A stretch of 64,000 nt of DNA, taken from IMG/VR virus record IMGVR_UViG_3300044701_000569, positions 124,001-188,000 of that record. The stretch is one strand, 5' to 3'. Below are positions 14,801 to 37,749 of the stretch, piece by piece. Numbering within the stretch: position 1 is the stretch's first letter; the number at the start of each line of letters is the position of its first letter. A model generated the notes under the pieces. The model saw only the letters and a list, made by a program, of their open reading frames with translations. It had not been told where the DNA came from and did not search any database. The translations under genes and the position numbers were made by a program.

Positions 14801-15253
14801 CATCCTGTAAAATATAAGTCTCTCTTTGGTAGCAAAGCAAGATCAGATCTACAGGTTACATTTAAGATAGTAAAAAATCCTGCTCTAACAGTAAACAACA
14901 ATGAAATAAAAGCTAAGGTAATTGATTCAATTAATCGATTCTTTAGTATAGAATACTGGAATTTTGGTGATACTTTCTATTTCTCAGAGCTAAGTGCTTA
15001 TGTAATGAATGGCTTATCACCAGAACTAGTATCATTCTTAATGGTACCAAAGCAGTCAGATCAAGGCTTTGGAAGCCTTTTTGAAGTTAAATCAGAAAGC
15101 GATGAAATTTTTATCTCGGCAGCAACAGTTTCCGATATAGAAATTATCGACGAAATAACAGCAACAAATCTTAAAGCTCTAGGCAATGTAGTTACAAGTG
15201 TATCATCAAGCAAGAGCGGAATACAAAGTTCGTCAAGTAGAGGTTCATATTAA
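11819..15253 (+). CDS. gp6: gp6-like baseplate wedge subunit (enlarged, 1144 aa)
   Basis: DFDNLRRTMINYL...FNDYIESS...LIDLIAF...NARENFLETAERRESVLRLARLISY, IFSDGVFG, APATYYTQNRLITAEDY are gp6/baseplate-J motifs; follows gp25. Confidence 0.88.
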   Translation: MSSTDRQSRLLATEDWKTIYQSFRNADFQSYDFDNLRRTMINYLRQNYPEDFNDYIESSEYLALIDLIAFLGQNLSFRIDLNARENFLETAERRESVLRLARLISYNATRNQAANGLLKFETVKTTESVFDSTGLNLAGIVVRWNDRGNSNYFEQFIKILNAALPVNGTYGRPIKSDNIAGVLTQQYRFNAANIDIPVYPFTRNIEGTSTRFEIVSSDILNGSIVEEPPLPANNPAFLYRDDGQGASSSNTGFFMHFRQGRLDSGPFTINNPTPNQIVAIDSVNINNTDVWLYSTDSNGIETELWTKLEAIEGNNIIYNSLFRGIRNAYAVQTRIEDRINLIFSDGVFGNLPSGNFKIYYRTSENRNSIINPGALTNVSIDIPYISKNNTQETLTVSLNLKYSISNGAASESNEEIKSNAPATYYTQNRLITAEDYNVGPLGISQDIIKTKSVNRIASGISRYYDLKDASGKYSNTSLFADDGILYKEEFLRKTAFTFATQSDIEGVIYNLIEPILASANTNNFYLAKYGKIIVSDLGVDWSQITKSTNRCTGVFVDADLARQKVGTFTANSLRLVEAGSMLKFTAPDGYHFMPDGTLMQGDADHLGSTSYKWAKVISVYGNGTQIDSSGSGSIVLNDIIPEGAVLNQIIPKLSRVLIDDIKSQIIDRVFAYRDFALRYDQEARQWKIITAENINTVNPWSTGKAGDSSGQNLDSSWILNFKTNGQSYTVTYRNLRYVFESAGEIRFFFDSADKIYDPKTGQLVKDKISVLNINRKPDSLVPFTKDYIWTISDAFRDTEGYVDSRKIQVEFFDNDDDGVVDDPDLFEQIVAEAINPSSKFVFQKKYMTTDGVEDFKYFNNSSGTIMVKNNEAAIGSPSSYNDGQVFYLIEEGLFKVLNITNNNTTVTVDYKAFVGRNDLKFHYVHVADSNYRIDPSSTNIIDTYLLTKGYDTEYRKYLSSDTAVQPLPPSSDELFRSYGAEINKIKSISDEVVYHPVKYKSLFGSKARSDLQVTFKIVKNPALTVNNNEIKAKVIDSINRFFSIEYWNFGDTFYFSELSAYVMNGLSPELVSFLMVPKQSDQGFGSLFEVKSESDEIFISAATVSDIEIIDEITATNLKALGNVVTSVSSSKSGIQSSSSRGSY

Positions 15254-15255
15254 TA

Positions 15256-18200
15256 ATGTCTAATCATACTCAAAATGAAAATGCTTTGCCTGTACCAGGC
15301 AACAACAGTAGAGCTGTTTCGGATCTGCTACCTAGATATTTTAGAACTGAAGCAAATAAAAAGTTTTTACAATCAACATTAGACCAACTAGTACAACCTG
15401 GTGTAGCAGAAAAAATTAGTGGATTTTTTGGAAGAAAAAATTCTAAAGCATATGCTGCTGGAGACAATTACATTGGTGATGTTTCTAAAGCAAGAGAAAA
15501 TTACCAGTTAGAACCTGCACTGGTTATAAAAGATAATCTAGACAATGTAACTTTCTACAAAGATTATAACGACTATGTAAATCAGTTAAAGATTTTTGGT
15601 GCTAACACAACTAATCACAGTAGACTTAATAGTCAGGAAACTTATGCTTGGAACCCAAATATAGATTGGGATAAGTTTGTTAATTTTAGAGAATATTATT
15701 GGATACCAACTGGACCTAAAACAGTAAGAGTTACAGGTCAGGCCAAAGAAGTAATCAGTACCTATACAGTACGTCTTACTGATAATGGTGATAATGTTTC
15801 TTATCTATTTTCTCCCGACGGTTTTACGTCAAACCCAAGCCTTAAGCTATACAGAGGACAGACTTATAGATTTGACATAGATTGTGTTGGTCATCCTATG
15901 GCTATAGCAATCAGTAGAACATTTACTCCTGGTAACGCTGTAGTTGTTGCAGGTCGAGAAGGTGTTAGAGGCGAAGGGCTCTTTGACGCAAAATTATACG
16001 GCAACGATTACGATCTTGGCGATTATATCATTCTACCAGACAGCGGTTCAGTAACCTTTGACGCCGATGAAAATGTTTCTACACTTTATCCAGATGGTAT
16101 TCGTAAGTTAGGAGAAGCTGGAGAAGAAATTGCAAACGTGTATATAGAAAAGGGAATTATTGAATTTACTATTCCCATTAATGCTCCTGACAAATTATAT
16201 TACATATCTAAGAATGATGTTGATGTTAGTGGTTTAATAAAAATTTATGACATTGAAGAAAATACTTTCTTAGATGTTGAAACAGAAATATTAGGCAAGA
16301 AAACCTACAAGAGTGCTAACGGTATTGAATTTACTAACGGTCTTAAAGTTGAATTTTTAGGTACAGTAGTGCCTAAAATATACAGCGAAGGTAATTGGTA
16401 TGTTGAAGGAGTAGGAGATAAAATTAGATTAATTGAAGAAAAAGATTTAATTATTCCAGCTTCATATACTGCTAATATAAATGTTCCTTTTGACAGTGAG
16501 GGGTTTGATACTCTTCCCTTTAGTGATTCATCTTCTTATGCAAAAGAAAAAGATTATATTGTAATTAACAGATCTAGTAGAGATAGAAATCCTTGGAGCA
16601 GATATAATAAATGGATACACAAGGACGTATTAATTAAAACTGCAGAATACAACAAGATACCATTTGATATAGATGAAAATCTAAGAGCTAAACGTCCTAT
16701 TATTGAATTTGAAGCAGGCTTAAAACTCTATAATTACGGATCATTTGCAAAACTAGACGTTGATTTAGTAGATGCTTTCACGCTTGATGTTTTTTCAACA
16801 ATTGAAGGTAGTCTAGGATATAACATTGACGGTATTGATGTAGCTGACGGAATGAGAATTTTATTCACAGCAGATCGAGACAAGTTAGTAAACGGAAAAA
16901 TTTATCAAGTAAAATTTGTAACTATAGGTAATAACAGACAAATAAGCCTTATTGAAGTTTCTGACTCTGAACCTCTTGATTTAGAAACTGTGTTTGTTAT
17001 CAACGGTAATAATTATGGCGGCAAAACATTTCATTATCACGGCGATAGATGGATGTTAGCGCAAGAAAAAACAAAGAGAAATCAACCGCCGTTATTTGAA
17101 TTAGTTGATGCAGAAGGAAATAATCAAAGTAATTCAAATATTTTTAATGCTACTACATTTAAAGGTAGTAAGATCTTTAGTTATAAGATTGGCAATGGAG
17201 CCAATGATATAGAATTAGGATTTCCTTTAAGCTATAAAAATATTGAAAACAGCGGTGATATTGAATTTGAATTTAATCTTCTTACAGATACGTTTACCTA
17301 TCAAACCGAAACAGATATTATTTCAGTATCAACGTCAACTAGCTGTTTAAAAAAGTTTACTGATAGAACAAATTTTGATTATGTTAACGGTTGGTCAAAG
17401 ACACCAACTGTTTCAAAGCAAAAGGTAATTAGACAATACGTTTCTACCCAAGCAGAAAATAATAATTTTCAAATTGATGTTTATAACAAGGCTGCTTTTA
17501 TTACAGATCTTCGAGTAAACGTTTTTGTTAATAATAAGTTAAAGAAACAAGAACTAGATTATACACTTGATAGAATAAATGAAAAAGTATTTGTTAGATT
17601 TTTTAATGATTTAGAAGAAAATTCTAATGTTATTTTAAAGACTGATTCTACTACACCTAAGAACGATAATGGTTGGTATGATTTTCCTATCAATCTAGAA
17701 AGAAATCCGCTTAACGAAGATATATCGACATTTACGTTAGGTGAAGTTATTGATCATGTTGATAGCATGATTGAAGATATTTACGAGTTTACTGGCACTT
17801 ATCCTGGACCTAGTAACTTAAGAGATCTTGGAGAACTAGATGTTTACGGTAAACGGTTTGTAAAACACAGTAGTCCGTTAAATCTTGCTTTATATCATAT
17901 TACTAACAAGAAGTACAACATAGTTAAAGCTATGGACTACAGCAGAAAAGAGTATGCAAGATTTAAAAGAATCTTTATTGAAACTGCTTCTACTTTAGGA
18001 TATGACGGTGAAATAAAACAACACGTTGATTTAATTCTTAAAGAAATTAACCGAGATAAGGTTAAGTCACAACCGTTCTATTTTTCAGATATGATAAATT
18101 GGGGGAACGATAACAAGGTTATAGAGTACGAAGTCCTTGATCCTCGCAATCCGTTTTACCCACTATCAGAAGTATTTGATATAACAGTACCAAGCCAGCG

Positions 18201-21200
18201 AGCAGTTAATGTATACCTAAACGGATATCAGTTAGTACACAATAAAGACTATACATTTAACAATGAAGGGTTCTTAGTACTTGATAGTTATCAACAAGAA
18301 GGTGACATTCTTAGAATATACGAAACTTCGTCTACTGACGGATCATTTATTCCGCCAACACCTACTAAATTAGGTTTATATCCTTCTTATGTACCACAAC
18401 TTATTATAGATGATACCTATCTATCAGAAGAACCTGTTATTAACGGACCATTTAAAATTTATGGTGAAGATGAGACTACTTCAAAAATAGGTTGGTTTTA
18501 TCCTGTATACACAAGTCGTCGAGCTGCTCAAAACGCAGACTCAAATAATGCAGCAAAACAACTAGTTCTAGCAGGTTATAACAGAGTACTGTATATTCCT
18601 ACTAATACAGGTATTGAAGCCGGAACTGATAATGTTGAACTTGATGAGTATCCTGTAGGAACTGCTGTAATACGAGGACACGACGGTAGTTTTGTTAAGG
18701 CATTTAAGGATTATAGAGATACCCTTATAATAGATCTTGAAAAACGAATATTCAATAATATTAAAGTTTTTTATAATCCACTAGAAACTGAGCTTCTTTA
18801 CGGTGAAGGAACGCTAAGTCTGTTTGATTTTGTACCCGGCAAATTTAGAAAAACTGAATTTACTAGAAACGAAATAAACGAATCTTTACGAGGATCTTTC
18901 GTAGAGTGGCTAAGCCTAGTTGAGACTGATTACACTAGTAATTATTTTTACGAAAGAGAAAATCAATTTACATTTAACTACAGTACCATGACTAACGTAG
19001 TTGATGGAACTAGTCTACCTGGATTTTGGAGAGGCGTTTACAAAGAACAATTTGATACTGATCGTCCTCACAGTCACCCATGGGAAATTTTAGGATTTAC
19101 TATTAAACCAAAGTGGTGGAACGAAGTTTATGGACCTGCTCCTTATACTGGTAACAACGGTGTTATGTGGGGTGATATTGAGAAAGGCATTATAAGAGAG
19201 CCTGGAAAACAGGTTAGGGTTTTAGAAAAGTTTGCTAGACCGGGACTCACTTCATTCATACCAGTTGACAGCAAAGGTAGATTGCTATCTCCTATTGCTG
19301 CTAATATTGCAAAAAATTTCGTATACAGAAATACTACACAGAGTTTTGAATTTGGTGATGAAGCTCCTGTTGAAACCGCTTGGAGAAGAAGTTCAGAGTA
19401 TCCGTTTGCTATTCTTAGAGCATGGGTTTTAAATCAGCCATCAAAAGCTATGGGCGTAGGATTTGATACCTCTAGACTTGATAAGAACTTAGTAGGACAG
19501 TATGTTTATAAAGATACTAAAAAGCATTTAACATTAGCAGATCTTCAGTTACCAAATACTTATGAAGACGCTTCAAGAATTCAAACATCGGGATTAATAA
19601 ATTTCATTTATAATCTTGTAGCAAGTAATATCTTAACAGTTTATAATGACTATAAAACAGACCTAGTATCTATTAGAAATCAATTAGGATTAAAACTAGG
19701 CGGTTTTACAGATAAGCAAAAGTTAAAAATTGTACTAGATAGTAGAAGTCCTAAAGCTAGTGAATCAGAAGGTGTATTTGTTCCTGAAGAGAACTACCAA
19801 GTATTTTTAAACACAAGTTCACCTGTTGAAACGATTGTATACAGTGGTGTAATTGTTGAAAAAGCACCTGACGGATTTATTATTCGCGGCTACAATAACG
19901 AAATTCCTTATTTTAAATATTTTCAAACTCAGTCAACACAGAATGATGTTACTGTAGTAGTTGGCGGTATAACTGAAAGTGCAAGCGAATGGGCAGCTAA
20001 TAGACGTTATGTTAAAGGTCAGCTGTTAATCAATTCTTTCAAATACTATAGAGTAACAGATAATTTTACTTCAGGACCAAGTTTTACAACAAATAATCTT
20101 GCTCTGTTATCTGACATTCCTATAGTAGGTGGTAAAAGAGCACAATTTAAGAAAAATTTCTTAAAATCAAGTAACAAAATTCTAACCTACGGTACTAAGT
20201 TGTCAACGTCGCAAGATGTTGTAGATTTTATATTAGGTTATGATGCATATTTAAAATATCAAGGTTTTACATTTGATTATTTTAATCGCGAAACAAACTT
20301 TGTTGAAAATTGGGACAATGCAGCTAGAGAATTTTTATTCTGGACTACACAAGGATGGGCGTCAGGAACAACTATATCGTTAAGTCCGGGTGCAACATCT
20401 CTAAATTTATCAACAGCTTACTCTGTTGCTGATGATATTCTTGATGTATTCTACAGCTACGGTGTAGTAAAGCAGGATGGCGATGCTTTAGATAGAAAGT
20501 TTATTTCTATATATAGAAATAAAAATGTGTTTGAAGTAAGACCTAAAAACACTAATGATGGCATATACGGTGTTTCTATTCCTGTAGTTCAGAAGGAACA
20601 TGTACTATTAATAGATAATACCACAGTGTTCAATGATATAATCTATCAACCATCTACTGGTTATAGACAGGAAAGATTAAAAGTTACAGGTTATCGATCA
20701 GATAACTGGACTGGCGGCCTAGATATTCCTGGATTTATATTTGACGATGCAACAATAACAGACTGGGAACCTTGGCAAGATTATAGCGTAGGATCTCTTG
20801 TAAAGTTTAAGCAATTTTATTATGTTGCAATATATCAAATTACTGGATCAGAAGAGTTTAATAGTAATTTTTGGTATAGACTCAATGAAAAACCTGTACC
20901 AAAATTATATACAAACTTTGATTATAAGATAAATCAATTTTCTGATTTTTATGATTTAGATTCTGATAACTTTGATGCTGAACAGCAAAGATTAGCTCAA
21001 CATCTAATAGGTTATCAGAAGAGAGAATATCTTGCTAATATCATTAACGATGACATCAGCCAGTATAAGTTCTATCAAGGATTCATACAAGACAAAGGAA
21101 CAAAAAATGCAATAACAAAATTGTTTGATCCTTTAAGTGGTTCTGATAGAGATAGTTTTGATTTCTACGAAGAATGGGCTATACAAGTAGGTCGTTACGG

Positions 21201-24200
21201 TGCTGTTGACAATGTTCAACAGGTTGAATACACTCTTGAAGAAAAGAAATTCCAAGAAGCGCCGCAGCCAGTACAGTTAGTTGATCAGTTACCAGTTGAA
21301 TCGTTTGATAATATCTATAGAATAAGACCATTTGAAGTTTACGACAAACCTGAAGGATACAATCATAAGCCGTTTCCAACTACTACAATAGATCCCGACT
21401 ATCTATTAAGCAGTGGTTATGTACACGAAGAAGATGTTGAGTACAAGGCCGGCTCTATTGATGATTTAGAAATAACAGATATTAATCAGCTACAGCTAGG
21501 ACAGTATATTTGGTTAACTAGAACTAACAGTGATGGGTGGACCGTTTATCAAATTTCTGATGCTATTGCAAATGTTACTGCCTTAGAAGCACTAGGTACG
21601 TTTACAGAAAACAACAAACCTATAATCAAATTAACTCTTGATAAATGGGCTGCTCCTATATTAAATGTAGGTGAATTAATTGCTGTCAAAGGAGCGACCG
21701 AATTTAATCTTACAGGTATTCATGAAGTAGATTTTCTAGATGCTGCAACAGTAAACATAGTTGCACCAGTTGAAAATGAAATAGAGCCTTTTGATAATCA
21801 GAAGTTTGTACTTGTAAAGTTAAGACAAGTACGTGTTTCTAATCTAGCTGCATTGAATAATCTAATACAAGAACAGATCTACGACAAGCAAAAAGTTTGG
21901 GTTGATAATTACAAAGATAATAATTGGGGTGTGTATCAGAATTCTCCAGTATACGGTGCAGTACAACAAGCACTAACTAATCCTGCACTGTTTGACAGTA
22001 CAGATCATAGATACAGCACTTCGATGACAGCAACAGATAATAATTATAATCTGTTTGTTTCTGCACCTGGCGACGGCGACGGCGTCGTATATCATTATAG
22101 AAGAACTAGGGATACAAATAATCTAATACAGGAACCAGCAATTAATCCTGATAGAGATCTCTTTAATACTACTAATAGTAACTTTGGCGAAAGTATTTCT
22201 GTAAGTCCTGACGGAGAGTTCTTAGCAGTTGGTATACCAGATGCTAGCCAAATAAAAACAAGATTTAGAGGTAATTTTGATCCCACACAGACTTATAATA
22301 AAAATGAAATAGTAAAATACAGAGAAAGTTTGTGGAAAGCCAATAGAGTTATTCTGCCAACAACAACAAATCAGCCATTCTCAACATTTGATACCTATGT
22401 ACAATTGGTGAACGAAGCTGACAGTGATTCTACAGCTATTAAACTTTTAATATCGGGTAATCCTGGTCTAGATAATAGTATATCAGATCATTTCTTAGTA
22501 CGTGCTCCGTTAGATATGTACCTTGGTACAAAATCTGGAGACCTAGTAAAACTAGGATGGAACCCAGTAAGTTTTGCTTATCCAACACTTGATCCTTATA
22601 CCCCGTTTGACAATGAGATACCTGAACTGTCTTCTTATATTGAAAATACACATGAGATACAGGCTAAGATTGATCACATATTATTTGTTGAAACATTTGT
22701 TGGTCTACCTGAGGTAGGAGAGCGAGTAACAACAAATACCGGGTCAGGCATAGTTCATTATGTAGATATCAAGGGTGATAGTGCAGTTATTTACGTTAAG
22801 GAAACTAACGGTACTTTTGATTTAACTGGTGAATTGTTTATTGATGACGCAGACTTTATTGGTTTTTATTCTGAAGAAGAAACTTATAATGTTGCAAGCA
22901 ATCTAGGAGGTTTCTGGTTATTTAAAACCTATAGAGTTGGAGAACCACCCGAATCAGGTTATACTAGTGAGCTGTCAAATGTAGACGGTTTTACTTACAA
23001 TAATAATAGCCGCTGGTATGACATTGGTAGAGGACTAGTTTATGTAGACGTTGTTACTGAAGAACACATAGGTAATCCTGGCAGACCATTTAACTATTAT
23101 AATATACAAAAGACTATCAGTGAAATAGGTGTTTACATCAGTAATAATAATCAAGCTAGTTTTATTGGACAGCTAACTTATTTTGGTGATCCTGGTAGAA
23201 CCTATCTTGTAGATACAGAAGATGAATATCCATCTAATCTATGGGTAGTCCGTGGATCAAAGGTTTATACTGACACTATTGAAACAGGTGACCACATTGA
23301 ATTTCGTCTTTATGATCTAGACAACAGAACTATCGATCTAGCATCAGCTGGACTTAGCTACGACATTTTAAATAAAGAACAAACTGTTTACGATCTTTGG
23401 GACGGATACATTGATTTTGAATACACTCGCTTCAACGCAGATGGTGATCCTTACGAGCCTGTAATAGGCGATATCTTACAAGATATACAAACACCGTTTG
23501 ATGAATTTGGAGGATTAGCACTTACTAGCTATTCAACTAGCACTGCTGAAGTTGTATTTTATCAACGAAAATTTAACTTTGTGCGTGTGTTTGTAAAGAA
23601 TAAAACAGGTAACTGGGCAAGACTAAACAACATTGGAAGAGTTGAAGTACGTAGACTTGCTAATGTTACTGCACGTGGATCAAGTGATGTTTCGAGAACC
23701 ATCGCTACAATAAACGATTTTAACAATGATGTTGTGCTAGGAAATGATCTTATTGGTAAGCTAGTTGTTTTCCAACATACTAGTAATTTTCCTCTAGTTT
23801 CAAATCCTTATATAACAGACGAAGAATATTATTTCTTCAATGAAGTAATTGATAACGGTGCTGCTAGAGACGAAAATCCACCAAACAGTTTAAACAAGGA
23901 CTATACGCAGGTTTATAATATTCCGGGCGATGAGTTTGGTGCAGTAGGTCCTAATAGTGCAGGCGCAGTTGCAATTTATAACAAAACTGCAAACGGTTCT
24001 TATAAGCTTCTAGTTCTGTTAAGTAGCGAATATGCAACGACTAATAGAAAATTTGGACAAAAAGTTAAGATAATACAGAACAAAGGTCTGTACACATTAT
24101 TTGCTTCTAGCGTTGGTGACACTTCGGACGATTACGGATCAATTGAAATCTTCAAACACGGGTACGAACCTGGCGAATATTTTAAAGGCAATTGGAAAGT

Positions 24201-27200
24201 ATCATCTAGTTACCTAAAAAATGATATTGTACGTAACAGAGACAATTATTACAAGGCAATAAAAAATATTTCTCCTGATGATAGTATTAATATTAATAAT
24301 TCTATCTACTGGAATAAAATTAGCTGGAGACAAGCTAAGGATGAAAATTATCAAGGAGCCCTTAATACTGCGTATCCTTATTCAATAGGATCTATAGTAA
24401 GTTATGACGGCTCATTATATAGAGCAAAAACTAATATTGCTGCAGGATCTAGTTTAAACTTTAATGAGTGGGAATTAGTATCAAACAATATTGATTATTT
24501 GGGATATTTGCCTAACAGAACAAGCAATGCGTTTTATGGTGAAGAAATTTATTCACCGTCAAGCACTTATATAGAACAGTTTGCTATAGATTATGACGTT
24601 AGCGATAGCGGATCAGTTATAGCAGTACTCACAAAAGAAGTTGATTCAGATAGTACTTCTAGAGTCAATCTAGTAATTTATAGATTAATAGATGAGCAAT
24701 ATCTTCTAGATCAAACTATTGAGTTAGGTAAAAATACAACTAGAGTGTCAATAAGTCCTCAAGGAAATATTATTGCTGTATCTGAACCTGAAAATGATGA
24801 AAGAAAAACTGATCAAGGTAAGGTGGTTGTTTACAGACAAGTTAATGGAGCATTTGCTTATGCACAAACTCTGCTTCCTCCGCAAAATGAGGAATCTGAA
24901 AAGTTTGGTTCAAGCATAGCTTTTAGCGATGATAATTTTGTTGTGTCAAGCCTTAACGGTGACATGAAGATACCAACTACATTTGATGTGGATAATAATA
25001 ACGAAACAACGTTTGATAGAGACTACACAACATTTAAAAATGTTATTAAAGATACGGGTGTTGTTTATATATTTGAAGATATTGAAGATAGTTTAGTATA
25101 TTCTGAATCGTTCAGATATGATAATGCTACAATACAGTTTGGTGAAAACTTGTTATCTAATGGTAATCATATCTACGTTGGTATGCAGAGTGTTGGCAAC
25201 GACAACTATAAAGGAACAATTCTTAACTATCGTAAAACAAAGAATGCTGTTGCATGGAACAGAACAAGAGAACTAGTCCCTCCTGTAGATGTTTCAAAGA
25301 TTCGAGGAGCGTTCTTATATAATAAAAGAACTAATCAAATTGTAACTTATTTAGATTACATAGATCCTATACAGGGTAAGATAGCAGGACCTGCAGAACA
25401 AGAAATTACTCATAGAGTTCCTTATGACCCTGCTACATACAACGTTGGTGTATTTACAGGCGTTGACAAAGATACTTTCTGGGCCGAAGAACATGTGGGC
25501 GAAGTATGGTGGAATCTAAAAACAGCAAGATTTACATACCCATATCAAGGAGATATACAGTATCAAAAGGCCAATTGGAATGAGCTACAGCCTGGATCGT
25601 CTATCGATGTTTATGAATGGGTTGAAAGTCGATTCCTTCCTAGTCAGTGGGACACACTAGCTGATAGTGAGTCTGCACTAAACGAAGGCATAAGCGGAGT
25701 TTCAATTTACGGTGATAATCTCTACACTCAAAAGTTTGTATATGATCCTGTTTCTAAAACATTTAGTAATAGATTTTATTTTTGGGTAGGTAGAAAATTA
25801 ACAGTACCCAAAGTTGAAAACAGATCTCTAAGTGTATTTGATATAGCTAGACTAATAGCAACGCCACGAGAGCAAGGCTACAGATTTGTTAACTTCTTAG
25901 GTTCAGATAGATTCCTGTTGAATAATTGTGATTCTTTAATCTATAACGATGATATAGTATTGAATATTAAATATGCAACTGGTAAAAACACAGAACAACA
26001 GCTTCACAGTGCATACTATATTATGTCAGAAGGATTAGAATCAAGTTCTATTCATCCCGACATTGAACGAAAATGGTTTGATAGTTTGATAGGATTTGAT
26101 GAACAGAATAGAACAATTCCTGACACAAAACTAACTGTAAAACAAAAATACGGAGTTCAAAACAGACCTCGACAGAGTATGTTTGTAAACAGAGAAGAAG
26201 CTCTAAAGCAGGTTATTGAAAGAATAAATTCTGTACTAGTTACTGAGTCTATTTTAGATAGTTATAACACATCGTCGCTGATGTTAAAGGATAACGAACC
26301 AACTGAAATAGATAGAACTTTTGACAGCACAATTGATACACTTGAAGAATTAAGATTTGTTAGTACAAACAAGATTTCTCAAGCTGTTCTTACACCTATA
26401 ATTCAAAATGGACGCATTGTTCGTGTTGATATAGATGATCCAGGTCGAGGATATAAAATTGTACCTACATATACACTGGTAGGACCAGGAACTGATGCTG
26501 AATTTGAGCTTACTATTAATAACCTAGGACAAATTACAGATGTAACTATTCTTAATTCAGGAAGAGGTTATGATGATAACACTAGAATCCTTGTTAGAAA
26601 ACATAGTGTATTGGTAAAAAATGATGCATCAATACACGGTAAATGGGCAATTTATTCTTGGAATAATGAAACAAGTTCATGGTTTAGATCTACTATACAA
26701 GGGTATGATGTAACAGCTTATTGGTCTTATGCTGACTGGTATGCTAATGGCTATAACACCTTTACTAAAATAGATCATGAGATTGATGTAACTGATGACA
26801 TTTTTAAACTAAATGTAAATTTAGGTAGTACTGTAAGAATAGCTAATGTAGGATCAGGTGGTTGGTTACTTCTAGAAAAAATAGCAGCAGTTGACTCTGA
26901 AGATTACACTGTTAATTACAAAACTATTGGTAGACAGAACGGAACTATACAATTTAAAGACACTCTGTATAATTTCCAAAAAAATACTATAGGATTTGAT
27001 AATAGAAACTATGACAGTGTTGCATACGACAATCTTTCAGCAAGGGAATTGCGAATCATTTTAAATGCAATAAAGAACGATATTTTTGTAGGTAATTTAA
27101 AAGTTGAATATAACAAATTATTCTTTGCATCTTTACGATATATTCTTACTGAACAGAATTATGTTGATTGGTTCTTTAAGACTAGCTTTATTAAGATTAA

Positions 27201-30200
27201 ACACAATGTTGGTAAGCTAGAACAAGACCTAACTTTTAACACAGATACTTTACCAAGTTATAGAAAATATGTTGAAGAAGTTAAACCTTACAAGACTGTT
27301 ATTAGAGAATTTGTAAGTGCTTATGAAACTACTGAAAATACGAATAGTTCAGTATCTGATTTTGACTTACCTCCATTCTATAGTAAACTAGATAGAAAGA
27401 ATATTACTACTGATGCTATTGTAGTATCAAGTAGAATAATCAGTGACGACGAAAATTTAACAGAATATCCAAGAAAAAATTGGTTAGATAATGTTGGTTA
27501 TATTGTTAAAGAGATACAGGTCAAAAATGGCGGCAGCGGATTCTTATACAAGCCTGTTGTTCGCTTAGTTGGAGGAGGAGGAACAGGTGCTACAGCTGAA
27601 GCATATTTAGGTTATGGAAAAGTTACGTCTATTAAAGTAATAAATCCTGGCAAAAATTACATTACTGCACCTCAGGTTATTATTGAAGGATCTCAACTAG
27701 ACACCGGAACTCCAGCAACTGCTTCTGCTATTCTTGGCAGCGGTGTAGTTAGAACTCCAACAGTAAAAATTAAGTTTGACAGAACTTCTAAAAACTACTT
27801 TATTAGCACATTAGATCAGACTGAAAATTTTATTGGTGAAAGCATAAGAACTACCTACGACCTAGAATGGCCTATCGATTTGCAACCAAAAAATATTAAG
27901 GTTTATATCGATAACGAAGAACAACTTAGAAGTACATATACTTGTTCTAACGCAACAAACAAAGACATTGGTTATACTAGACAACAGGGTAGATTAAAAT
28001 TTGTTAAGCCGCCTGTACTTGATGCAGCTATACGAATAGAATATAAGCGTCCCCTGTCTATGTTAAATGCATCTGATAGAATCAATTTTGCTTATAACCC
28101 TCTAGCAGGAATGCTAGGCAAAGACTTAGCACAGCTAATGGATGGTGTTGACTACGGCGGCGTTGAAGTAACAAGTTTTGACTTTGGTGGTCCTGGTGGC
28201 TGGGACGTAAAAGGATGGTATACTGATACTTGGGACACGTTTGACAATACATTTGAAGATGATGTGTTTACATTTGACGGTTCAACTTCAGTAATAGAAT
28301 TATCAACTGTTCTCGAAAACGGTGTGATCTATAACATATACCTTAACGGTGACAGAATAGATGATCCTAATTTTGGAACACCTCAGCAGTATAATCCTAA
28401 TGCCCGAATGCCAAGTATTATAGGCGACGGTGAAACTAAGATTATTGATCTAGGAGAATACGGATTCTTTGCTAACGACAATGACGTTTTGATTGTTAGA
28501 AAGTACACTAGTGATGGTAGCTTTATTCCAGATCCTGAAAGTTATGATACTGCATTATCTGGTGGAGATTTACCTTATACTACAGCTAAGGGAGTTAGGG
28601 CTGAAGAAATTGTAGTTGACGGCGACGGATTTGTAACACCTACTACAAGTAAGGGTCCTGAAGAATTAGTACCAGGACAAGTATTAGACACAGTTGATAT
28701 CAAAGTTTATACTAGAGATAGTGTAGGTCAGGGAATGATTTATAGTCAAAGTTACATAATGGATGCAACTGTAACTACATACTCGTTAGGAGTTGTTCCT
28801 GGCACTCGACCTTCTATATTTGTTAAAATGGATAACAGATTATTAGCCAATGAAGAGTATACTATTGATTGGGAAAATAATTCAATAACAATTCTTACAC
28901 CTATAGACGGTGTAGAACTTAATATTTTAACTGTTGAAAGAGGCGGACAGGACATAGTTGACTATGGTAGAATTATAGCAGATGCTTCAACTACTGACTA
29001 TGAAATTTCTAGAAAATATGTAGAAGGAATGACAGCATTTGTTACAGTTGACGGAATTCAAATTCATGTAATTCTGTATGCTTCTGAATTAAACGAAAAT
29101 GCAGTAATTAGATTTGAAGAAGTGCAAGATGCAGGTGCAGTTATACACTGGACGCTGTTTTCAACAGATACGGTTGTAAATTATAGCGTTGTATCAAAGG
29201 AAACTTTTGTAGCAGACGGAGTTAACAATTTGTTTGTATTAGCTTCAGCACCGTTCTATTCAATACCTACAACTTATAATATAATGGTAAAAGTTGAAAA
29301 TAGAATACTTAATCCCGGCTATAATATCCAGTACGAGATTCCCGCTAATAGACAGAGAGAATATCCTTTAGAATCTTTCCAACAACCTGGGAATGCATTA
29401 CTTACTGAAAATATTAATGTCTATGTTAATGGTTCACAAGTATTTGCCCCAACACAATGGAGATTTGACATCTTTAATAGTAGCGTAATACTTTCGGATG
29501 CAGTTGGTGATGTAGGTGATACATTAGAAATATATGTAATATCTGACGGGGAATACCAATTAAACGGCACTAACTTAACAATAGGTCAAACGCCAGACGA
29601 TGGTGATACTGTAGAAGTATTCAAATTTAGCAATCATGACCTTGTTGGCATAGAGCGCATAAACTATGATGTTGTTGCTAGAGATACATTGATAGCAGAA
29701 GATATTGATTATGTAACATACAATCGATTAACAGTAGGTGAAATTAAGTTAAGAAAGCCTGCTGCGGATGTACAATATGTTTGGGTAAGCGTAAATGGAG
29801 AATTATTAACACCTAGTGTTGATTACTATCTTGTTGATAACAAAAAGAAAGTTAGATTAGTTAGAAGACCTGCTCAAAATGATGCAATTGATATCATTCA
29901 CTTTACGCCGCCGGTGTCTCAGCCTAAGTTTGCGTTTAGACAGTTTAAAGACATGCTGAATAGAACACACTACAAGCGTTTAGACGCACCTACTACAGTT
30001 CTAGCACAGCCATTAAACTCTTATGATTTAAGAATTGAAGTTGAAGACGGAACTAGTTTACCGTTGCCAAACAAGGGTGGTAATTTACCGGGTATTATAT
30101 TTGTAAACGGTGAACGTATTGAGTATCTTGTAAAAGAAGGAAATACACTAAGACAACTTCGTAGAGGTACTCTAGGAACAGGTGTAAAAGATACACACGA

Positions 30201-30651
30201 TGCTGGTTCAGACGTATACGATCAGAGTATGCTAAAAACAGTTCCATACAAAGATGTTACACAAATACAAAAAGAAGAGGGTAACGGAGTTACTAGTACA
30301 TGGACATTAAACTTTAAAGCTCAAACAGTTAACGAGTTTGATGTGTTTGTTGCAGGTAGAAGATTAAGAAAAACAGCAATAGCTGTGTTTAATCCTATAC
30401 AAGCACTAGACAGCACCGATGGAGATACTGTATCACCTGCTGAATTTACATTAAATAACACTGTAAATGAAGAAACGGGAGAAATTATTAGTAGTCAAGT
30501 ACAACTTGCTGTTGTACCTGGCAATAAGCAAACAGTAAACTTTATTAGGAAAATAGGAAAAACCTGGGCAGCACCCGGTGAAACACTATCAACCAGTCAG
30601 GCTGATATTGGAATTTTCTTGAGAGCAGGAACAACCAAGCTGCCCGAATAA
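15256..30651 (+). CDS. giant (5131 aa) baseplate wedge/adhesin protein in the gp7 position
   Basis: Uninterrupted 15.4-kb ORF directly after gp6; N-terminal DLLPRYFRTEANKKFLQSTLDQL is wedge-like. Contains CBM5/12-like W.....Y..G..V.Y...Y repeats, FG-GAP-like propeller blades, G.GY/GGGG.GA.A repeats and V.VNG...DY beta-sandwich repeats. Confidence 0.75.
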   Translation: MSNHTQNENALPVPGNNSRAVSDLLPRYFRTEANKKFLQSTLDQLVQPGVAEKISGFFGRKNSKAYAAGDNYIGDVSKARENYQLEPALVIKDNLDNVTFYKDYNDYVNQLKIFGANTTNHSRLNSQETYAWNPNIDWDKFVNFREYYWIPTGPKTVRVTGQAKEVISTYTVRLTDNGDNVSYLFSPDGFTSNPSLKLYRGQTYRFDIDCVGHPMAIAISRTFTPGNAVVVAGREGVRGEGLFDAKLYGNDYDLGDYIILPDSGSVTFDADENVSTLYPDGIRKLGEAGEEIANVYIEKGIIEFTIPINAPDKLYYISKNDVDVSGLIKIYDIEENTFLDVETEILGKKTYKSANGIEFTNGLKVEFLGTVVPKIYSEGNWYVEGVGDKIRLIEEKDLIIPASYTANINVPFDSEGFDTLPFSDSSSYAKEKDYIVINRSSRDRNPWSRYNKWIHKDVLIKTAEYNKIPFDIDENLRAKRPIIEFEAGLKLYNYGSFAKLDVDLVDAFTLDVFSTIEGSLGYNIDGIDVADGMRILFTADRDKLVNGKIYQVKFVTIGNNRQISLIEVSDSEPLDLETVFVINGNNYGGKTFHYHGDRWMLAQEKTKRNQPPLFELVDAEGNNQSNSNIFNATTFKGSKIFSYKIGNGANDIELGFPLSYKNIENSGDIEFEFNLLTDTFTYQTETDIISVSTSTSCLKKFTDRTNFDYVNGWSKTPTVSKQKVIRQYVSTQAENNNFQIDVYNKAAFITDLRVNVFVNNKLKKQELDYTLDRINEKVFVRFFNDLEENSNVILKTDSTTPKNDNGWYDFPINLERNPLNEDISTFTLGEVIDHVDSMIEDIYEFTGTYPGPSNLRDLGELDVYGKRFVKHSSPLNLALYHITNKKYNIVKAMDYSRKEYARFKRIFIETASTLGYDGEIKQHVDLILKEINRDKVKSQPFYFSDMINWGNDNKVIEYEVLDPRNPFYPLSEVFDITVPSQRAVNVYLNGYQLVHNKDYTFNNEGFLVLDSYQQEGDILRIYETSSTDGSFIPPTPTKLGLYPSYVPQLIIDDTYLSEEPVINGPFKIYGEDETTSKIGWFYPVYTSRRAAQNADSNNAAKQLVLAGYNRVLYIPTNTGIEAGTDNVELDEYPVGTAVIRGHDGSFVKAFKDYRDTLIIDLEKRIFNNIKVFYNPLETELLYGEGTLSLFDFVPGKFRKTEFTRNEINESLRGSFVEWLSLVETDYTSNYFYERENQFTFNYSTMTNVVDGTSLPGFWRGVYKEQFDTDRPHSHPWEILGFTIKPKWWNEVYGPAPYTGNNGVMWGDIEKGIIREPGKQVRVLEKFARPGLTSFIPVDSKGRLLSPIAANIAKNFVYRNTTQSFEFGDEAPVETAWRRSSEYPFAILRAWVLNQPSKAMGVGFDTSRLDKNLVGQYVYKDTKKHLTLADLQLPNTYEDASRIQTSGLINFIYNLVASNILTVYNDYKTDLVSIRNQLGLKLGGFTDKQKLKIVLDSRSPKASESEGVFVPEENYQVFLNTSSPVETIVYSGVIVEKAPDGFIIRGYNNEIPYFKYFQTQSTQNDVTVVVGGITESASEWAANRRYVKGQLLINSFKYYRVTDNFTSGPSFTTNNLALLSDIPIVGGKRAQFKKNFLKSSNKILTYGTKLSTSQDVVDFILGYDAYLKYQGFTFDYFNRETNFVENWDNAAREFLFWTTQGWASGTTISLSPGATSLNLSTAYSVADDILDVFYSYGVVKQDGDALDRKFISIYRNKNVFEVRPKNTNDGIYGVSIPVVQKEHVLLIDNTTVFNDIIYQPSTGYRQERLKVTGYRSDNWTGGLDIPGFIFDDATITDWEPWQDYSVGSLVKFKQFYYVAIYQITGSEEFNSNFWYRLNEKPVPKLYTNFDYKINQFSDFYDLDSDNFDAEQQRLAQHLIGYQKREYLANIINDDISQYKFYQGFIQDKGTKNAITKLFDPLSGSDRDSFDFYEEWAIQVGRYGAVDNVQQVEYTLEEKKFQEAPQPVQLVDQLPVESFDNIYRIRPFEVYDKPEGYNHKPFPTTTIDPDYLLSSGYVHEEDVEYKAGSIDDLEITDINQLQLGQYIWLTRTNSDGWTVYQISDAIANVTALEALGTFTENNKPIIKLTLDKWAAPILNVGELIAVKGATEFNLTGIHEVDFLDAATVNIVAPVENEIEPFDNQKFVLVKLRQVRVSNLAALNNLIQEQIYDKQKVWVDNYKDNNWGVYQNSPVYGAVQQALTNPALFDSTDHRYSTSMTATDNNYNLFVSAPGDGDGVVYHYRRTRDTNNLIQEPAINPDRDLFNTTNSNFGESISVSPDGEFLAVGIPDASQIKTRFRGNFDPTQTYNKNEIVKYRESLWKANRVILPTTTNQPFSTFDTYVQLVNEADSDSTAIKLLISGNPGLDNSISDHFLVRAPLDMYLGTKSGDLVKLGWNPVSFAYPTLDPYTPFDNEIPELSSYIENTHEIQAKIDHILFVETFVGLPEVGERVTTNTGSGIVHYVDIKGDSAVIYVKETNGTFDLTGELFIDDADFIGFYSEEETYNVASNLGGFWLFKTYRVGEPPESGYTSELSNVDGFTYNNNSRWYDIGRGLVYVDVVTEEHIGNPGRPFNYYNIQKTISEIGVYISNNNQASFIGQLTYFGDPGRTYLVDTEDEYPSNLWVVRGSKVYTDTIETGDHIEFRLYDLDNRTIDLASAGLSYDILNKEQTVYDLWDGYIDFEYTRFNADGDPYEPVIGDILQDIQTPFDEFGGLALTSYSTSTAEVVFYQRKFNFVRVFVKNKTGNWARLNNIGRVEVRRLANVTARGSSDVSRTIATINDFNNDVVLGNDLIGKLVVFQHTSNFPLVSNPYITDEEYYFFNEVIDNGAARDENPPNSLNKDYTQVYNIPGDEFGAVGPNSAGAVAIYNKTANGSYKLLVLLSSEYATTNRKFGQKVKIIQNKGLYTLFASSVGDTSDDYGSIEIFKHGYEPGEYFKGNWKVSSSYLKNDIVRNRDNYYKAIKNISPDDSININNSIYWNKISWRQAKDENYQGALNTAYPYSIGSIVSYDGSLYRAKTNIAAGSSLNFNEWELVSNNIDYLGYLPNRTSNAFYGEEIYSPSSTYIEQFAIDYDVSDSGSVIAVLTKEVDSDSTSRVNLVIYRLIDEQYLLDQTIELGKNTTRVSISPQGNIIAVSEPENDERKTDQGKVVVYRQVNGAFAYAQTLLPPQNEESEKFGSSIAFSDDNFVVSSLNGDMKIPTTFDVDNNNETTFDRDYTTFKNVIKDTGVVYIFEDIEDSLVYSESFRYDNATIQFGENLLSNGNHIYVGMQSVGNDNYKGTILNYRKTKNAVAWNRTRELVPPVDVSKIRGAFLYNKRTNQIVTYLDYIDPIQGKIAGPAEQEITHRVPYDPATYNVGVFTGVDKDTFWAEEHVGEVWWNLKTARFTYPYQGDIQYQKANWNELQPGSSIDVYEWVESRFLPSQWDTLADSESALNEGISGVSIYGDNLYTQKFVYDPVSKTFSNRFYFWVGRKLTVPKVENRSLSVFDIARLIATPREQGYRFVNFLGSDRFLLNNCDSLIYNDDIVLNIKYATGKNTEQQLHSAYYIMSEGLESSSIHPDIERKWFDSLIGFDEQNRTIPDTKLTVKQKYGVQNRPRQSMFVNREEALKQVIERINSVLVTESILDSYNTSSLMLKDNEPTEIDRTFDSTIDTLEELRFVSTNKISQAVLTPIIQNGRIVRVDIDDPGRGYKIVPTYTLVGPGTDAEFELTINNLGQITDVTILNSGRGYDDNTRILVRKHSVLVKNDASIHGKWAIYSWNNETSSWFRSTIQGYDVTAYWSYADWYANGYNTFTKIDHEIDVTDDIFKLNVNLGSTVRIANVGSGGWLLLEKIAAVDSEDYTVNYKTIGRQNGTIQFKDTLYNFQKNTIGFDNRNYDSVAYDNLSARELRIILNAIKNDIFVGNLKVEYNKLFFASLRYILTEQNYVDWFFKTSFIKIKHNVGKLEQDLTFNTDTLPSYRKYVEEVKPYKTVIREFVSAYETTENTNSSVSDFDLPPFYSKLDRKNITTDAIVVSSRIISDDENLTEYPRKNWLDNVGYIVKEIQVKNGGSGFLYKPVVRLVGGGGTGATAEAYLGYGKVTSIKVINPGKNYITAPQVIIEGSQLDTGTPATASAILGSGVVRTPTVKIKFDRTSKNYFISTLDQTENFIGESIRTTYDLEWPIDLQPKNIKVYIDNEEQLRSTYTCSNATNKDIGYTRQQGRLKFVKPPVLDAAIRIEYKRPLSMLNASDRINFAYNPLAGMLGKDLAQLMDGVDYGGVEVTSFDFGGPGGWDVKGWYTDTWDTFDNTFEDDVFTFDGSTSVIELSTVLENGVIYNIYLNGDRIDDPNFGTPQQYNPNARMPSIIGDGETKIIDLGEYGFFANDNDVLIVRKYTSDGSFIPDPESYDTALSGGDLPYTTAKGVRAEEIVVDGDGFVTPTTSKGPEELVPGQVLDTVDIKVYTRDSVGQGMIYSQSYIMDATVTTYSLGVVPGTRPSIFVKMDNRLLANEEYTIDWENNSITILTPIDGVELNILTVERGGQDIVDYGRIIADASTTDYEISRKYVEGMTAFVTVDGIQIHVILYASELNENAVIRFEEVQDAGAVIHWTLFSTDTVVNYSVVSKETFVADGVNNLFVLASAPFYSIPTTYNIMVKVENRILNPGYNIQYEIPANRQREYPLESFQQPGNALLTENINVYVNGSQVFAPTQWRFDIFNSSVILSDAVGDVGDTLEIYVISDGEYQLNGTNLTIGQTPDDGDTVEVFKFSNHDLVGIERINYDVVARDTLIAEDIDYVTYNRLTVGEIKLRKPAADVQYVWVSVNGELLTPSVDYYLVDNKKKVRLVRRPAQNDAIDIIHFTPPVSQPKFAFRQFKDMLNRTHYKRLDAPTTVLAQPLNSYDLRIEVEDGTSLPLPNKGGNLPGIIFVNGERIEYLVKEGNTLRQLRRGTLGTGVKDTHDAGSDVYDQSMLKTVPYKDVTQIQKEEGNGVTSTWTLNFKAQTVNEFDVFVAGRRLRKTAIAVFNPIQALDSTDGDTVSPAEFTLNNTVNEETGEIISSQVQLAVVPGNKQTVNFIRKIGKTWAAPGETLSTSQADIGIFLRAGTTKLPE

Positions 30652-30654: not shown

Positions 30655-30670
30655 CAATGTGGAAAAGGAA

Positions 30671-33338: not shown

Positions 33339-33339
33339 G

Positions 33340-35232: not shown

Positions 35233-35239
35233 TTTACGA

Positions 35240-35245
35240 TAAATA
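35240..35245 (+). promoter_or_regulatory. late promoter core ATAAATA upstream of tail fibre 3
   Basis: gaTAAATAa followed by a TAGGGGTT RBS-like element and ATG 35275. Confidence 0.55.
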
Positions 35246-35274
35246 ATATAAAGCACTATTAGGGGTTATTACAG

Positions 35275-37719: not shown

Positions 37720-37741
37720 TAAATCCTCATTCTTTAGAGTA

Positions 37742-37749
37742 TATAAATA
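37742..37749 (+). promoter_or_regulatory. exact T4 late promoter TATAAATA inside an 8-bp inverted repeat (37735-37754)
   Basis: TAGAGTAT-ATAA-ATACTCTA, followed by TAGGGGTT and ATG 37771. Confidence 0.72.

What the first reader, a model, noticed from the sequence alone, without database searches (positions are those of the whole stretch)
15256..30651. 5131-aa baseplate protein built as a multi-adhesin scaffold
Seen: five CBM5/12-like repeats (about 19990, 20764, 22276, 24193, 24361); FG-GAP-like blades (e.g. FGESISVSPDGEFLAVG ~22183, FGSSIAFSDD ~24904, FGENLLSN ~25138) split by a ~500-aa insert; G.GY/GGGG.GA.A repeats (26410-26580, 27500-27760); and many V.VNG...DY beta-sandwich units. Known: T4 gp7 is about 1000 aa. 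Inference: wedge, fibre-attachment and glycan-binding functions are fused in one giant chain that may bind polysaccharide (capsule/EPS/S-layer) and is a plausible acceptor for the glycosylation cluster.
Basis: partly seen in the sequence, partly recalled or inferred. Interest (0 to 1): 0.6.

Follow-up and report, generated by a model that had tools for sequence, protein, structure and literature searches.

The report
Giant jumbo-phage baseplate scaffold protein
This 5131-residue gene is a real, widely conserved giant virion protein that sits in the T4 gp7 slot of a freshwater jumbo phage's baseplate gene block and is built from many small binding-type domains. Its family is already known from cultured jumbo phages, and its glycan-binding role is still untested.

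Summary
The ORF (window 15256-30651, +, 5131 aa, 581 kDa) is real and is not an assembly chimera. At least 1210 protein clusters, mostly 4.6-5.5 thousand residues, match it. At least 548 IMG/VR contigs encode relatives, and contigs from four sequencing runs tile 5.9 kb of it without a single difference.

It belongs to phrog_10938. This family holds the giant "virion structural protein" that follows the gp25-like and gp6-like genes in PA5oct (3857 aa, found in virions by mass spectrometry) and Atu_ph07 (4449 aa).

- An AlphaFold model (pLDDT 84.5) shows a seven-bladed integrin-alpha/WD40-like propeller (Z 21-25) interrupted by a nested insert of about 760 aa.
- The CBM5/12-like units pass Pfam's cut-off only when summed.
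- The G.GY units match an Ig-like insert of a marine tailspike.
- The N-terminus holds a cupredoxin-like domain.

No sequence, profile or fold similarity to T4 gp7 was found, so the gp7 role rests on gene position alone. Divergence is even along the chain, which fits a conserved scaffold better than a swappable receptor binder. The "glycosylation cluster" downstream is in fact rich in radical SAM genes; no glycosyltransferase domain was found there. Verdict: a new member of a known but uncharacterised family.

The parts
15256..30651 (+). Giant ORF: 5131 aa, 581 kDa, pI 4.8, only 4 Cys. Member of phrog_10938 ('virion structural protein').
   Evidence: More than 1200 homologous clusters of similar length.
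15256..15744 (+). N-terminal domain, aa 1-163. It is the part best conserved with PA5oct and Atu_ph07 (36-39% identity). Short helices are predicted with low confidence. Candidate contact with the gp6-like wedge protein (inference).
15745..16266 (+). Cupredoxin-like beta-sandwich, aa 164-337, with a disordered loop at 225-273. The copper-ligand-like Cys and Met are not conserved in the family.
   Evidence: VIA Z 8-10.3 to nitrite reductase and multicopper oxidase domains. Foldseek. phrog_677 accessory domain, E 7.6e-8. Family consensus.
17425..17652 (+). Small beta domain, aa 724-799. It resembles modules of phage tailspike and tail-adaptor chains (CBA120 TSP4 residues 189-250; LME-1 and P-SCSP1u portal-tail chains).
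   Evidence: VIA Z 7.7-8.6, 62-71 residues aligned. Borderline.
18646..21363 (+). Conserved core, aa 1131-2036. It is shared colinearly with PA5oct gp355 and Atu_ph07 gp180 (about 29% identity) and is the main phrog_10938 match. Not folded here.
19954..20076 (+). CBM5/12-like unit 1, aa ~1567-1607.
   Evidence: A1 profile against the chitinase A1 chitin-binding domain 1ed7, E 0.067. Motif seen. The equivalent weak CBM_5_12 hit occurs in PA5oct and Atu_ph07.
20764..20895 (+). CBM5/12-like unit 2, aa ~1837-1880.
   Evidence: Pfam CBM_5_12, E 0.43 on its own. Motif.
21892..22275 (+). Beta-propeller, N-terminal ~2.5 blades, aa ~2213-2340. The FG motif is at nt 22183.
   Evidence: AF2 model pLDDT 84.5. 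VIA Z 21-25 to WD40 and integrin alpha propellers.
22276..24567 (+). Nested insert of about 760 aa inside the propeller, aa ~2341-3104. It holds CBM5/12-like unit 3 (aa 2341-2376), a helical stretch, a small beta-barrel (aa ~2465-2560), a mixed alpha/beta part, and CBM5/12-like units 4 and 5 (aa ~2979-3075, nt 24190-24480).
   Evidence: Secondary structure of the model. Pfam E 0.019 and 2e-5. A2 profile against tail-fibre and tail-spike chains 9rkv/8fqc, E 4e-5 and 8e-5, and chitinase 2rts, E 0.034. The domains of the insert could not be searched one by one.
24568..25353 (+). Beta-propeller, C-terminal ~4.5 blades, aa ~3105-3366. FG motifs are at nt 24904 and 25138.
   Evidence: Pfam FG-GAP_2 at aa ~3204-3236.
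26368..26625 (+). First pair of G.GY units, aa ~3705-3790, Ig-like.
   Evidence: A7 profile against Dpo31 D3* (chain residues 440-509), E 8.8e-5. D3* is described as Ig-like in PMC13317679.
27493..27750 (+). Second pair of G.GY / GGGGTGA units, aa ~4080-4165.
   Evidence: phrog_701, 22827, 460, 708 and 438, E 1e-8 to 1e-17, each matched over about 70 aa.
28453..30648 (+). C-terminal 732 aa with 'V.VNG...DY'-type units and a highly conserved block at aa ~4800-5000. A weak T7-tail-fibre-N-terminal-like hit lies at aa 4838-4888. Shared in part with PA5oct (aa 4692-4977). Not folded.
   Evidence: PF03906 is precomputed in 4 homologues.
8686..11313 (+). Context: gp5-like hub/spike with an M15 peptidase domain.
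11326..11763 (+). Context: gp25-like wedge protein.
   Evidence: Pfam GPW_gp25, E 4.6e-8.
11819..15253 (+). Context: gp6-like wedge protein, 1144 aa.
   Evidence: phrog_10646, E 1e-296, and phrog_219.
30659..31273 (+). Context: conserved 204-aa protein (phrog_11259). A gene of similar length (606 nt), flagged as found by ESI-MS/MS, sits near the same position in PA5oct.
31284..36768 (+). Context: three fibre-type genes (684, 630 and 497 aa) that share their N-terminal 170-380 aa at 32-43% identity. The first carries a phage tail collar domain.

Best explanation
The ORF encodes the giant peripheral baseplate protein of a freshwater jumbo myophage related to the RaK2/PA5oct/Atu_ph07 group.

Shown:
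- It is a genuine, conserved gene of phrog_10938.
- It lies in the slot that gp7 occupies in T4, straight after the gp25-like and gp6-like wedge genes and before the fibre genes.
- Its PA5oct homologue is a virion component.
- It contains a seven-bladed integrin-alpha/WD40-type propeller with a nested insert of about 760 aa, CBM5/12-like units, Ig-like G.GY units and a cupredoxin-like domain.

Inferred:
- One copy per wedge joins the gp6-like inner ring, probably through its best-conserved N-terminal ~160 aa.
- The rest forms the outer rim of an enlarged baseplate.
- That rim gives docking sites for the three downstream fibres, which share an N-terminal part.
- It may add weak, multivalent contacts with host surface polysaccharide through the propeller and the CBM-like units.

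Because divergence is even along the chain, I read it as a conserved scaffold, not as the host-range determinant.
For: - Intact ORF.
- phrog_10938, E 1.8e-214.
- About 29% identity over 82-84% of the first 2000 aa to PA5oct, Atu_ph07, Phosso and SCTP-2 homologues.
- Same gene order in PA5oct and Atu_ph07, with ESI-MS/MS noted for PA5oct gp355. The PA5oct paper names gp128, next to baseplate wedge gp129, among its largest proteins.
- Neighbours are gp5-, gp25- and gp6-like, followed by fibres.
- At least 1210 clusters and at least 548 viral contigs.
- An identical ORF in a second IMG/VR record.
- Contigs of four runs tile nt 20500-26400 with no difference.
- Colinear 40-70% identity over all 5131 aa and even divergence among close relatives.
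- Propeller model pLDDT 84.5, Z 21-25.
- N-terminal model and its domains.
- Ig-like match.
- The fibre genes share their N-terminal parts.
- No other gp7-type gene in the 357.6-kb genome.
- Published work calls gp7-like parts a hotspot for re-engineering that binds different fibres (PMC8894135).
Against: - No sequence, profile or fold similarity to T4 gp7 was found in any segment. The best hhalign result against an 11-member gp7 family profile was E 0.07.
- Only aa 1-1140 and 2200-3399 were folded, so about 2800 aa have no model.
- The test of binding to the gp6-like protein could not be run.
- Virion presence is known only for a homologue with 29% identity.
- Copy number, location in the baseplate and any ligand are unknown.
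- The single CBM5/12 and FG-GAP Pfam scores are at or below the cut-offs.
Confidence: 0.7

Rival explanations
1. It is chiefly a receptor-binding adhesin. The propeller and the five CBM5/12-like units would bind capsule, EPS or S-layer glycans and set host recognition, with the scaffold role secondary.
For: - Integrin-alpha-type propeller.
- CBM_5_12 above the Pfam cut-off when summed.
- Profile hits to chitin-binding domains and to tail-fibre and tail-spike chains.
- The Ig-like units resemble an insert of a depolymerase tailspike whose authors note a distant likeness to sugar-binding domains.
- Propeller receptor-binding proteins are known in staphylococcal phages (PMC4901313, listed).
- The propeller blades are somewhat less conserved than average.
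Against: - There is no hypervariable or swapped module. Divergence is even along the chain in both close and distant relatives, unlike typical receptor binders.
- Three separate fibre genes follow.
- The first CBM-like unit lies in the core shared with phages of very different hosts, which suggests a structural role.
- No binding data exist.
Confidence: 0.2
2. It is a virion protein with another place and role (a fibre shaft, a tail-length or sheath-associated protein, or a head/neck decoration), and its place next to the gp6-like gene says nothing about function.
For: - PHROG labels the family 'head and packaging / virion structural protein'.
- There is no gp7 homology.
- Atu_ph07's homologue has a weak sheath-domain-I-like hit.
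Against: - The gene order hub, gp25, gp6, giant, fibres is kept from freshwater phages to PA5oct and Atu_ph07.
- The models show globular beta domains, not a fibre shaft or a helical tape measure.
- The start codon lies 2 nt after the gp6-like stop, which suggests coupled expression.
Confidence: 0.08
3. The ORF is an artefact: an assembly chimera or several genes fused by error.
For: Only its extreme length.
Against: - More than 100 independent assemblies give 5.0-5.5 thousand aa ORFs.
- A second IMG/VR record gives an identical ORF.
- Contigs from four runs lie on nt 20500-26400 with no differences, gaps or joints. X2 and X6 may be the source sample; X7 and X9 are not flagged as such.
Confidence: 0.01

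Closest known systems
Giant 'virion structural protein' of RaK2-like and related jumbo phages (phrog_10938): PA5oct gp355 (gp128 in the paper, 3857 aa), Atu_ph07 gp180 (4449 aa), and the homologues in Phosso, SCTP-2 and XbC2
   Same: Same family (E 1.8e-214). Same slot after the gp25-like and gp6-like genes and before a small protein and the fibres. Colinear shared blocks at aa 1-2036, 3293-4037 and 4692-4977. A weak CBM5/12-like unit sits in the shared core.
   Different: Only about 29% identity. This clade's protein is 700-1300 aa longer. The roughly 1250-aa middle (aa 2040-3290), with the propeller and its nested insert, has no BLAST counterpart in PA5oct or Atu_ph07, and Pfam finds no FG-GAP there. 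None of these proteins has a solved structure or a tested function.
T4 gp7 (baseplate wedge initiator, 1032 aa, phrog_964) and the gp7-like parts of other contractile systems
   Same: The position of the gene, directly after gp6. The expected role as the outward-reaching wedge component that carries fibres. Published work describes gp7-like parts as the evolvable, fibre-binding periphery (PMC8894135).
   Different: No detectable sequence, profile or fold similarity. Five times longer. T4 has separate gp8 to gp11, whereas here no such genes were recognised between the giant and the fibres.
Integrin alpha-subunit FG-GAP beta-propeller with an inserted I domain
   Same: A seven-bladed propeller. 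7usm_A: Z 23.8, 348 residues aligned, 14% identity. 4wjk_A: Z 21.6, 369 aligned, 16% identity. A large domain is inserted after about the second blade. Pfam FG-GAP_2 is at the cut-off.
   Different: WD40 propellers score equally well (3ow8_A, Z 24.7), so the match is to the fold class. The insert here is about 760 aa of several domains, not a von Willebrand A domain. Calcium sites were not examined. No ligand is known.
Ig-like D3* insert of the marine podovirus Carin-1 tailspike Dpo31
   Same: The G.GY units match it by profile (E 8.8e-5). The same roughly 70-aa module is found in several PHROG families of virion proteins.
   Different: In Dpo31 it is a single insert in a beta-helix depolymerase. 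Here there are two pairs in a non-enzymatic giant chain. Its function is unknown in both.

Membership tests
phrog_10938 giant virion structural protein (PA5oct gp355 / Atu_ph07 gp180 type) | Significant profile match over long colinear stretches | tested here: met
   E 1.8e-214, 3.4e-79 and 1.8e-82 for the three pieces. tblastn covers 82-84% of the first 2000 aa at 29% identity. Colinear blocks.
phrog_10938 giant virion structural protein (PA5oct gp355 / Atu_ph07 gp180 type) | Gene order gp25-like, gp6-like, giant, small protein, fibres | tested here: met
   Window. PA5oct and Atu_ph07 records. Gp6-like ORFs lie upstream of the giant in 78 related loci.
phrog_10938 giant virion structural protein (PA5oct gp355 / Atu_ph07 gp180 type) | Presence in the virion | not testable with these tools
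   Known only for PA5oct gp355 (ESI-MS/MS note in the record). No isolate of this clade is available.
T4 gp7 baseplate wedge protein (phrog_964) | Sequence or profile similarity to gp7 | tested here: not met
   The giant does not hit phrog_964. phmmer and hmmsearch against PDB found no gp7 chain. hhalign of A1, A2, A4, A5 and A7 against T4 gp7 and against an 11-member gp7 profile gave a best E of 0.07.
T4 gp7 baseplate wedge protein (phrog_964) | gp7 fold | tested here: inconclusive
   Models of aa 1-1140 and 2200-3399 gave no gp7 chain among the listed matches. The lists were filled by cupredoxins and propellers, and aa 1141-2199 and 3400-5131 were not folded.
T4 gp7 baseplate wedge protein (phrog_964) | Forms the wedge core together with two copies of gp6 | not tested
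T4 gp7 baseplate wedge protein (phrog_964) | Gene immediately downstream of gp6 | tested here: met
FG-GAP / integrin-alpha-type beta-propeller | Seven four-stranded blades closing into a ring | tested here: met
   AF2 model, pLDDT 84.5, 28 strands in sets of four. VIA Z 21-25, 280-370 residues aligned.
FG-GAP / integrin-alpha-type beta-propeller | FG-GAP sequence repeats above Pfam's threshold | tested here: inconclusive
   PF14312 scores 23.2 bits against a cut-off of 23 in the long piece and 21.6 in the short one. It is precomputed in about 37 of 120 homologues (my count). WD40 propellers match the fold equally well.
CBM5/12 carbohydrate-binding module | Pfam PF02839 match above the gathering score | tested here: inconclusive
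   33.2 bits against 26.2 only as the sum of several units. Single units score 11-25 bits. PF02839 is precomputed in about 94 of 120 homologues.
CBM5/12 carbohydrate-binding module | Binding of chitin, cellulose or another glycan | not testable with these tools
   Needs a binding assay.

The most novel reading that the evidence does not exclude
In this very widespread clade of freshwater and marine jumbo phages, one 581-kDa chain would replace the whole set of T4 peripheral baseplate proteins (gp7 to gp11). Its integrin-like propeller, with a nested multi-domain insert, would be a true surface-glycan adhesin, so that the baseplate rim itself makes the first contact with the host. Less likely, the chain could also be a substrate of the 12 radical SAM enzymes encoded just downstream.
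Probability: 0.15. Interest if true: 0.65.

Novelty: new member of a known kind. Interest (0 to 1): 0.42.

Why it matters
- Giant proteins in the gp7 slot are a shared but unstudied mark of the RaK2/PA5oct/Atu_ph07-type jumbo phages. None has a structure or a tested role.
- The freshwater/marine version found here is very common: more than 1200 protein clusters and more than 500 IMG/VR contigs.
- Two parts of it fold confidently in silico, which gives a concrete domain map for cryo-EM fitting and for expressing fragments.
- If the propeller and the CBM-like units do bind host glycans, baseplate rims of jumbo phages would count as adhesion organs in their own right.
- As it stands, this is a good annotation of a known family, not a new system.

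Tried and rejected
T4 gp7 homology
- Tested by phmmer and hmmsearch against PDB, by PHROG, and by hhalign against T4 gp7 alone and against a profile of 11 gp7 sequences that I built. All were negative.
- A tempting 122-column alignment of the insert (aa ~2379-2506) to gp7 residues 669-801 did not hold with the family profile (E 0.07, probability below 1%).

Fold searches
- With whole models, one domain each filled the lists: propeller and cupredoxin.
- BFVD returned only pieces of the same family.

Tools that gave nothing or were unavailable
It gave no verdict.
- Fold search 'atlas' was not installed.
- The protein-atlas search gave only viral hypothetical clusters for the C-terminus and was busy on the second try.

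Other negative checks
- Self-BLAST found no internal repeats, and a strict regular expression for V.VNG units found only 3.
- A type-1 copper site in the cupredoxin-like domain was rejected, because the Cys and Met are not conserved.
- The weak Pfam hits (Mistic, TRAP_beta, T4_gp9_10_N at E 0.17, DUF4183, Phage_T7_tail at E 0.06) were treated as noise or as leads only.
- The big representative search was not used, because the word search already gave ample relatives.

Housekeeping
- No alternative genetic code was needed.
- Read laying was given 5901 letters.
Full report
**1. The observation**

The window holds one uninterrupted frame from 15256 to 30651 on the + strand, 5131 aa. Its ATG lies 2 nt after the TAA stop of the upstream gene, and GAGG lies about 12 nt before it. 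The product is 581 kDa, has pI 4.8 and has only four cysteines.

- FG motifs at nt 22183, 24904 and 25138.
- G.GY motifs at nt 26443, 26560 and 27532.
- CBM5/12-like Y..G..V...YY.A motifs near nt 20008, 20782 and 24211.

**2. It is not an artefact**

The window is part of a 357,559-base IMG/VR virus record that CheckV rates as complete.
- A word search with aa 1130-2040 found 1210 protein clusters at E <= 0.001. Nearly all of the 120 listed are 4.6-5.5 thousand aa long, from NCBI, ENA, JGI, Logan and Tara assemblies.
- A profile scan of IMG/VR found at least 548 contigs that encode a relative.
- A second IMG/VR record carries an identical ORF.
- Twenty of the listed sequencing runs, from 13 studies and mostly freshwater and lake metagenomes, hold the stretch nt 20500-26400 or part of it.
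- Contigs of four of those runs lie on that stretch with no differences, gaps or joints. Two of the four may be the source sample; two are not flagged so.

**3. Family and context**

PHROG places the protein in phrog_10938, 'virion structural protein' (E 1.8e-214). tblastn against cultured phages finds about 29% identity over 82-84% of the first 2000 aa in several jumbo phages:
- the Pseudomonas PA5oct group,
- Agrobacterium Atu_ph07,
- Sinorhizobium Phosso,
- Salicola SCTP-2.

The RaK2-like Escherichia, Klebsiella and Erwinia jumbo phages match more weakly.

In PA5oct the homologue is gp355, 3857 aa, flagged ESI-MS/MS. In Atu_ph07 it is gp180, 4449 aa. In both it follows a small wedge gene and a gp6-like 'baseplate wedge subunit', and it precedes small proteins and fibre-type genes. 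The PA5oct paper names gp128, next to baseplate wedge gp129, as one of the phage's two largest proteins (PMC7318152).

The window has the same order:

| Window coordinates | Gene |
|---|---|
| 8686-11313 | gp5-like hub with an M15 peptidase |
| 11326-11763 | gp25-like |
| 11819-15253 | gp6-like |
| 15256-30651 | the giant |
| 30659-31273 | conserved 204-aa protein |
| 31284-36768 | three fibre-type genes |

The three fibre genes share their N-terminal 170-380 aa at 32-43% identity.

**4. What is shared and what is particular**

Against PA5oct and Atu_ph07 the colinear shared blocks are aa 1-2036, 3293-4037 and 4692-4977. The roughly 1250 aa between 2040 and 3290 have no counterpart there. Pfam finds only a weak CBM_5_12 hit and no FG-GAP in those two proteins.

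Within the freshwater/marine clade the whole chain is colinear, at 40-70% identity in 40 homologues. The lower stretches are aa 2100-2300, 2500-2700, 4500-4800 and 5000-5100. Among the closest relatives divergence is spread evenly, with no hypervariable module.

**5. Structure**

*Middle part.* An AlphaFold2 model of aa 2200-3399, from 47 sequences, has pLDDT 84.5 and pTM 0.70. An exhaustive structural search gives Z 21-25 to seven-bladed propellers:
- WD40: 3ow8_A, Z 24.7, 288 residues aligned.
- Integrin alpha: 7usm_A, Z 23.8, 348 aligned. 4wjk_A, Z 21.6, 369 aligned, 16% identity.

The aligned range runs from model residue ~32 to ~1136. The strand pattern shows about 2.5 blades at aa ~2213-2340 and about 4.5 blades at aa ~3105-3366. 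So the propeller is split by a nested insert of about 760 aa. The insert holds three CBM5/12-like units, a helical stretch, a small beta-barrel and further beta-rich parts. These could not be searched separately.

*N-terminal part.* A model of aa 1-1140, from 55 sequences, has pLDDT 78 and pTM 0.62. It shows:
- a cupredoxin-like sandwich at aa 164-337 (Z up to 10.3), whose copper-ligand-like Cys and Met are not conserved;
- a small beta domain at aa 724-799 that resembles modules of tailspike and tail-adaptor chains (Z 7.7-8.6).

BFVD returned only pieces of the same family, Atu_ph07 included.

**6. The small modules**

*CBM5/12-like units.* Pfam CBM_5_12 passes its cut-off only as a sum (33.2 against 26.2 bits, E 5e-8). 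Single units score E 0.43, 0.019 and 2e-5. Family profiles weakly hit:
- chitinase chitin-binding domains (E 0.067; E 0.034);
- the tail-fibre and tail-spike chains 9rkv and 8fqc (E 4e-5 and 8e-5).

*G.GY units.* They match a roughly 70-aa module shared by several PHROG families of virion proteins. By profile they match residues 440-509 of the marine podovirus tailspike Dpo31 (E 8.8e-5). That region is the Ig-like insert D3*, for which the authors report only a distant likeness to sugar-binding domains (PMC13317679).

*V.VNG units.* They are visible by eye but were not supported by self-BLAST or by a strict regular expression, and that region was not folded.

**7. Is it gp7?**

By position, yes. 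By homology, not shown.
- T4 gp7 (1032 aa, phrog_964) is not hit by any segment in PHROG.
- Sequence and profile searches of PDB found no gp7 chain.
- hhalign against T4 gp7 was negative.
- hhalign against a profile of eleven gp7 sequences from T4 to KVP40-like phages gave a best E of 0.07.
- The two models did not list a gp7 chain.
- The genome has no other match to phrog_964 or to Tail_P2_I.

Published structures describe the gp7-like part of wedges as the exposed, evolvable region that binds different fibres (PMC8894135). That is what this protein's place and make-up suggest.

**8. Mechanism**

*Shown:* a conserved giant protein encoded in the baseplate gene block (a homologue is virion-borne) and built from a propeller, CBM-like, Ig-like and cupredoxin-like domains.

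*Inferred:*
- One chain per wedge is anchored to the gp6-like ring, most likely through the N-terminal ~160 aa. That part is the best conserved with distant relatives and is predicted with low confidence on its own, as expected of a segment that folds on a partner.
- The chain forms an enlarged outer rim.
- The rim docks the three fibres that share an N-terminal part.
- It possibly adds multivalent weak contacts to host polysaccharide.

The even divergence argues for a scaffold and against a host-range determinant. Confidence in the baseplate-scaffold reading is about 0.7. Confidence in a primary adhesin role is about 0.2.

**9. The glycosylation link**

I scanned 27 ORFs between 36778 and 63655. 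Twelve carry Radical_SAM, four of them with a SPASM domain placed N-terminally. Two show weak GDSL-like hits and one a weak methyltransferase hit. None matched a glycosyltransferase family.

**10. Verdict**

This is a new, longer member of a known but uncharacterised family of giant jumbo-phage baseplate proteins, with a clade-specific propeller module. Interest is moderate.

Noticed in passing
window 43205-63655 (+): A dense run of 12 ORFs with Radical_SAM domains, starting at 43205, 44580, 46763, 47716, 49014, 50002, 51290, 56866, 57932, 61248 and 62657 among others. Four of them have a SPASM domain at the N-terminus instead of the usual C-terminus. A paper search found no description of such a cluster in jumbo phages.
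   Followed up: partly
window 53717-56197 (+): Three consecutive ORFs of exactly 276 aa each. Two of them have weak GDSL-like lipase/acylhydrolase hits (E 0.02-0.09). They are probably tandem paralogues inside the radical SAM cluster.
   Followed up: no
window 21305-22134: In two runs from different studies (X7, X9), contigs break off at the same four places (21305, 21807, 22050, 22134) and continue with the same unlike sequence. This points to a co-occurring strain that diverges in aa ~2017-2293, the least conserved part of the protein.
   Followed up: partly
window 31284-36768 (+) and 36778-38763 (+): Three fibre-type genes share their N-terminal 170-380 aa (32-43% identity) but differ at their C-termini: one has a tail collar domain and one a weak Peptidase_G2-like autoproteolysis hit. 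The next two ORFs (313 and 330 aa) are paralogues of each other at 36% identity.
   Followed up: partly
window 8686-11313 (+): The gp5-like hub/spike protein carries a C-terminal M15 D-Ala-D-Ala carboxypeptidase-type domain instead of a lysozyme.
   Followed up: no
PHROG library, phrog_701: The G.GY module also occurs in phrog_701, a 'virion structural protein' family with a profile of 6136 positions. At least one other family of giant phage virion proteins therefore shares this module.
   Followed up: no
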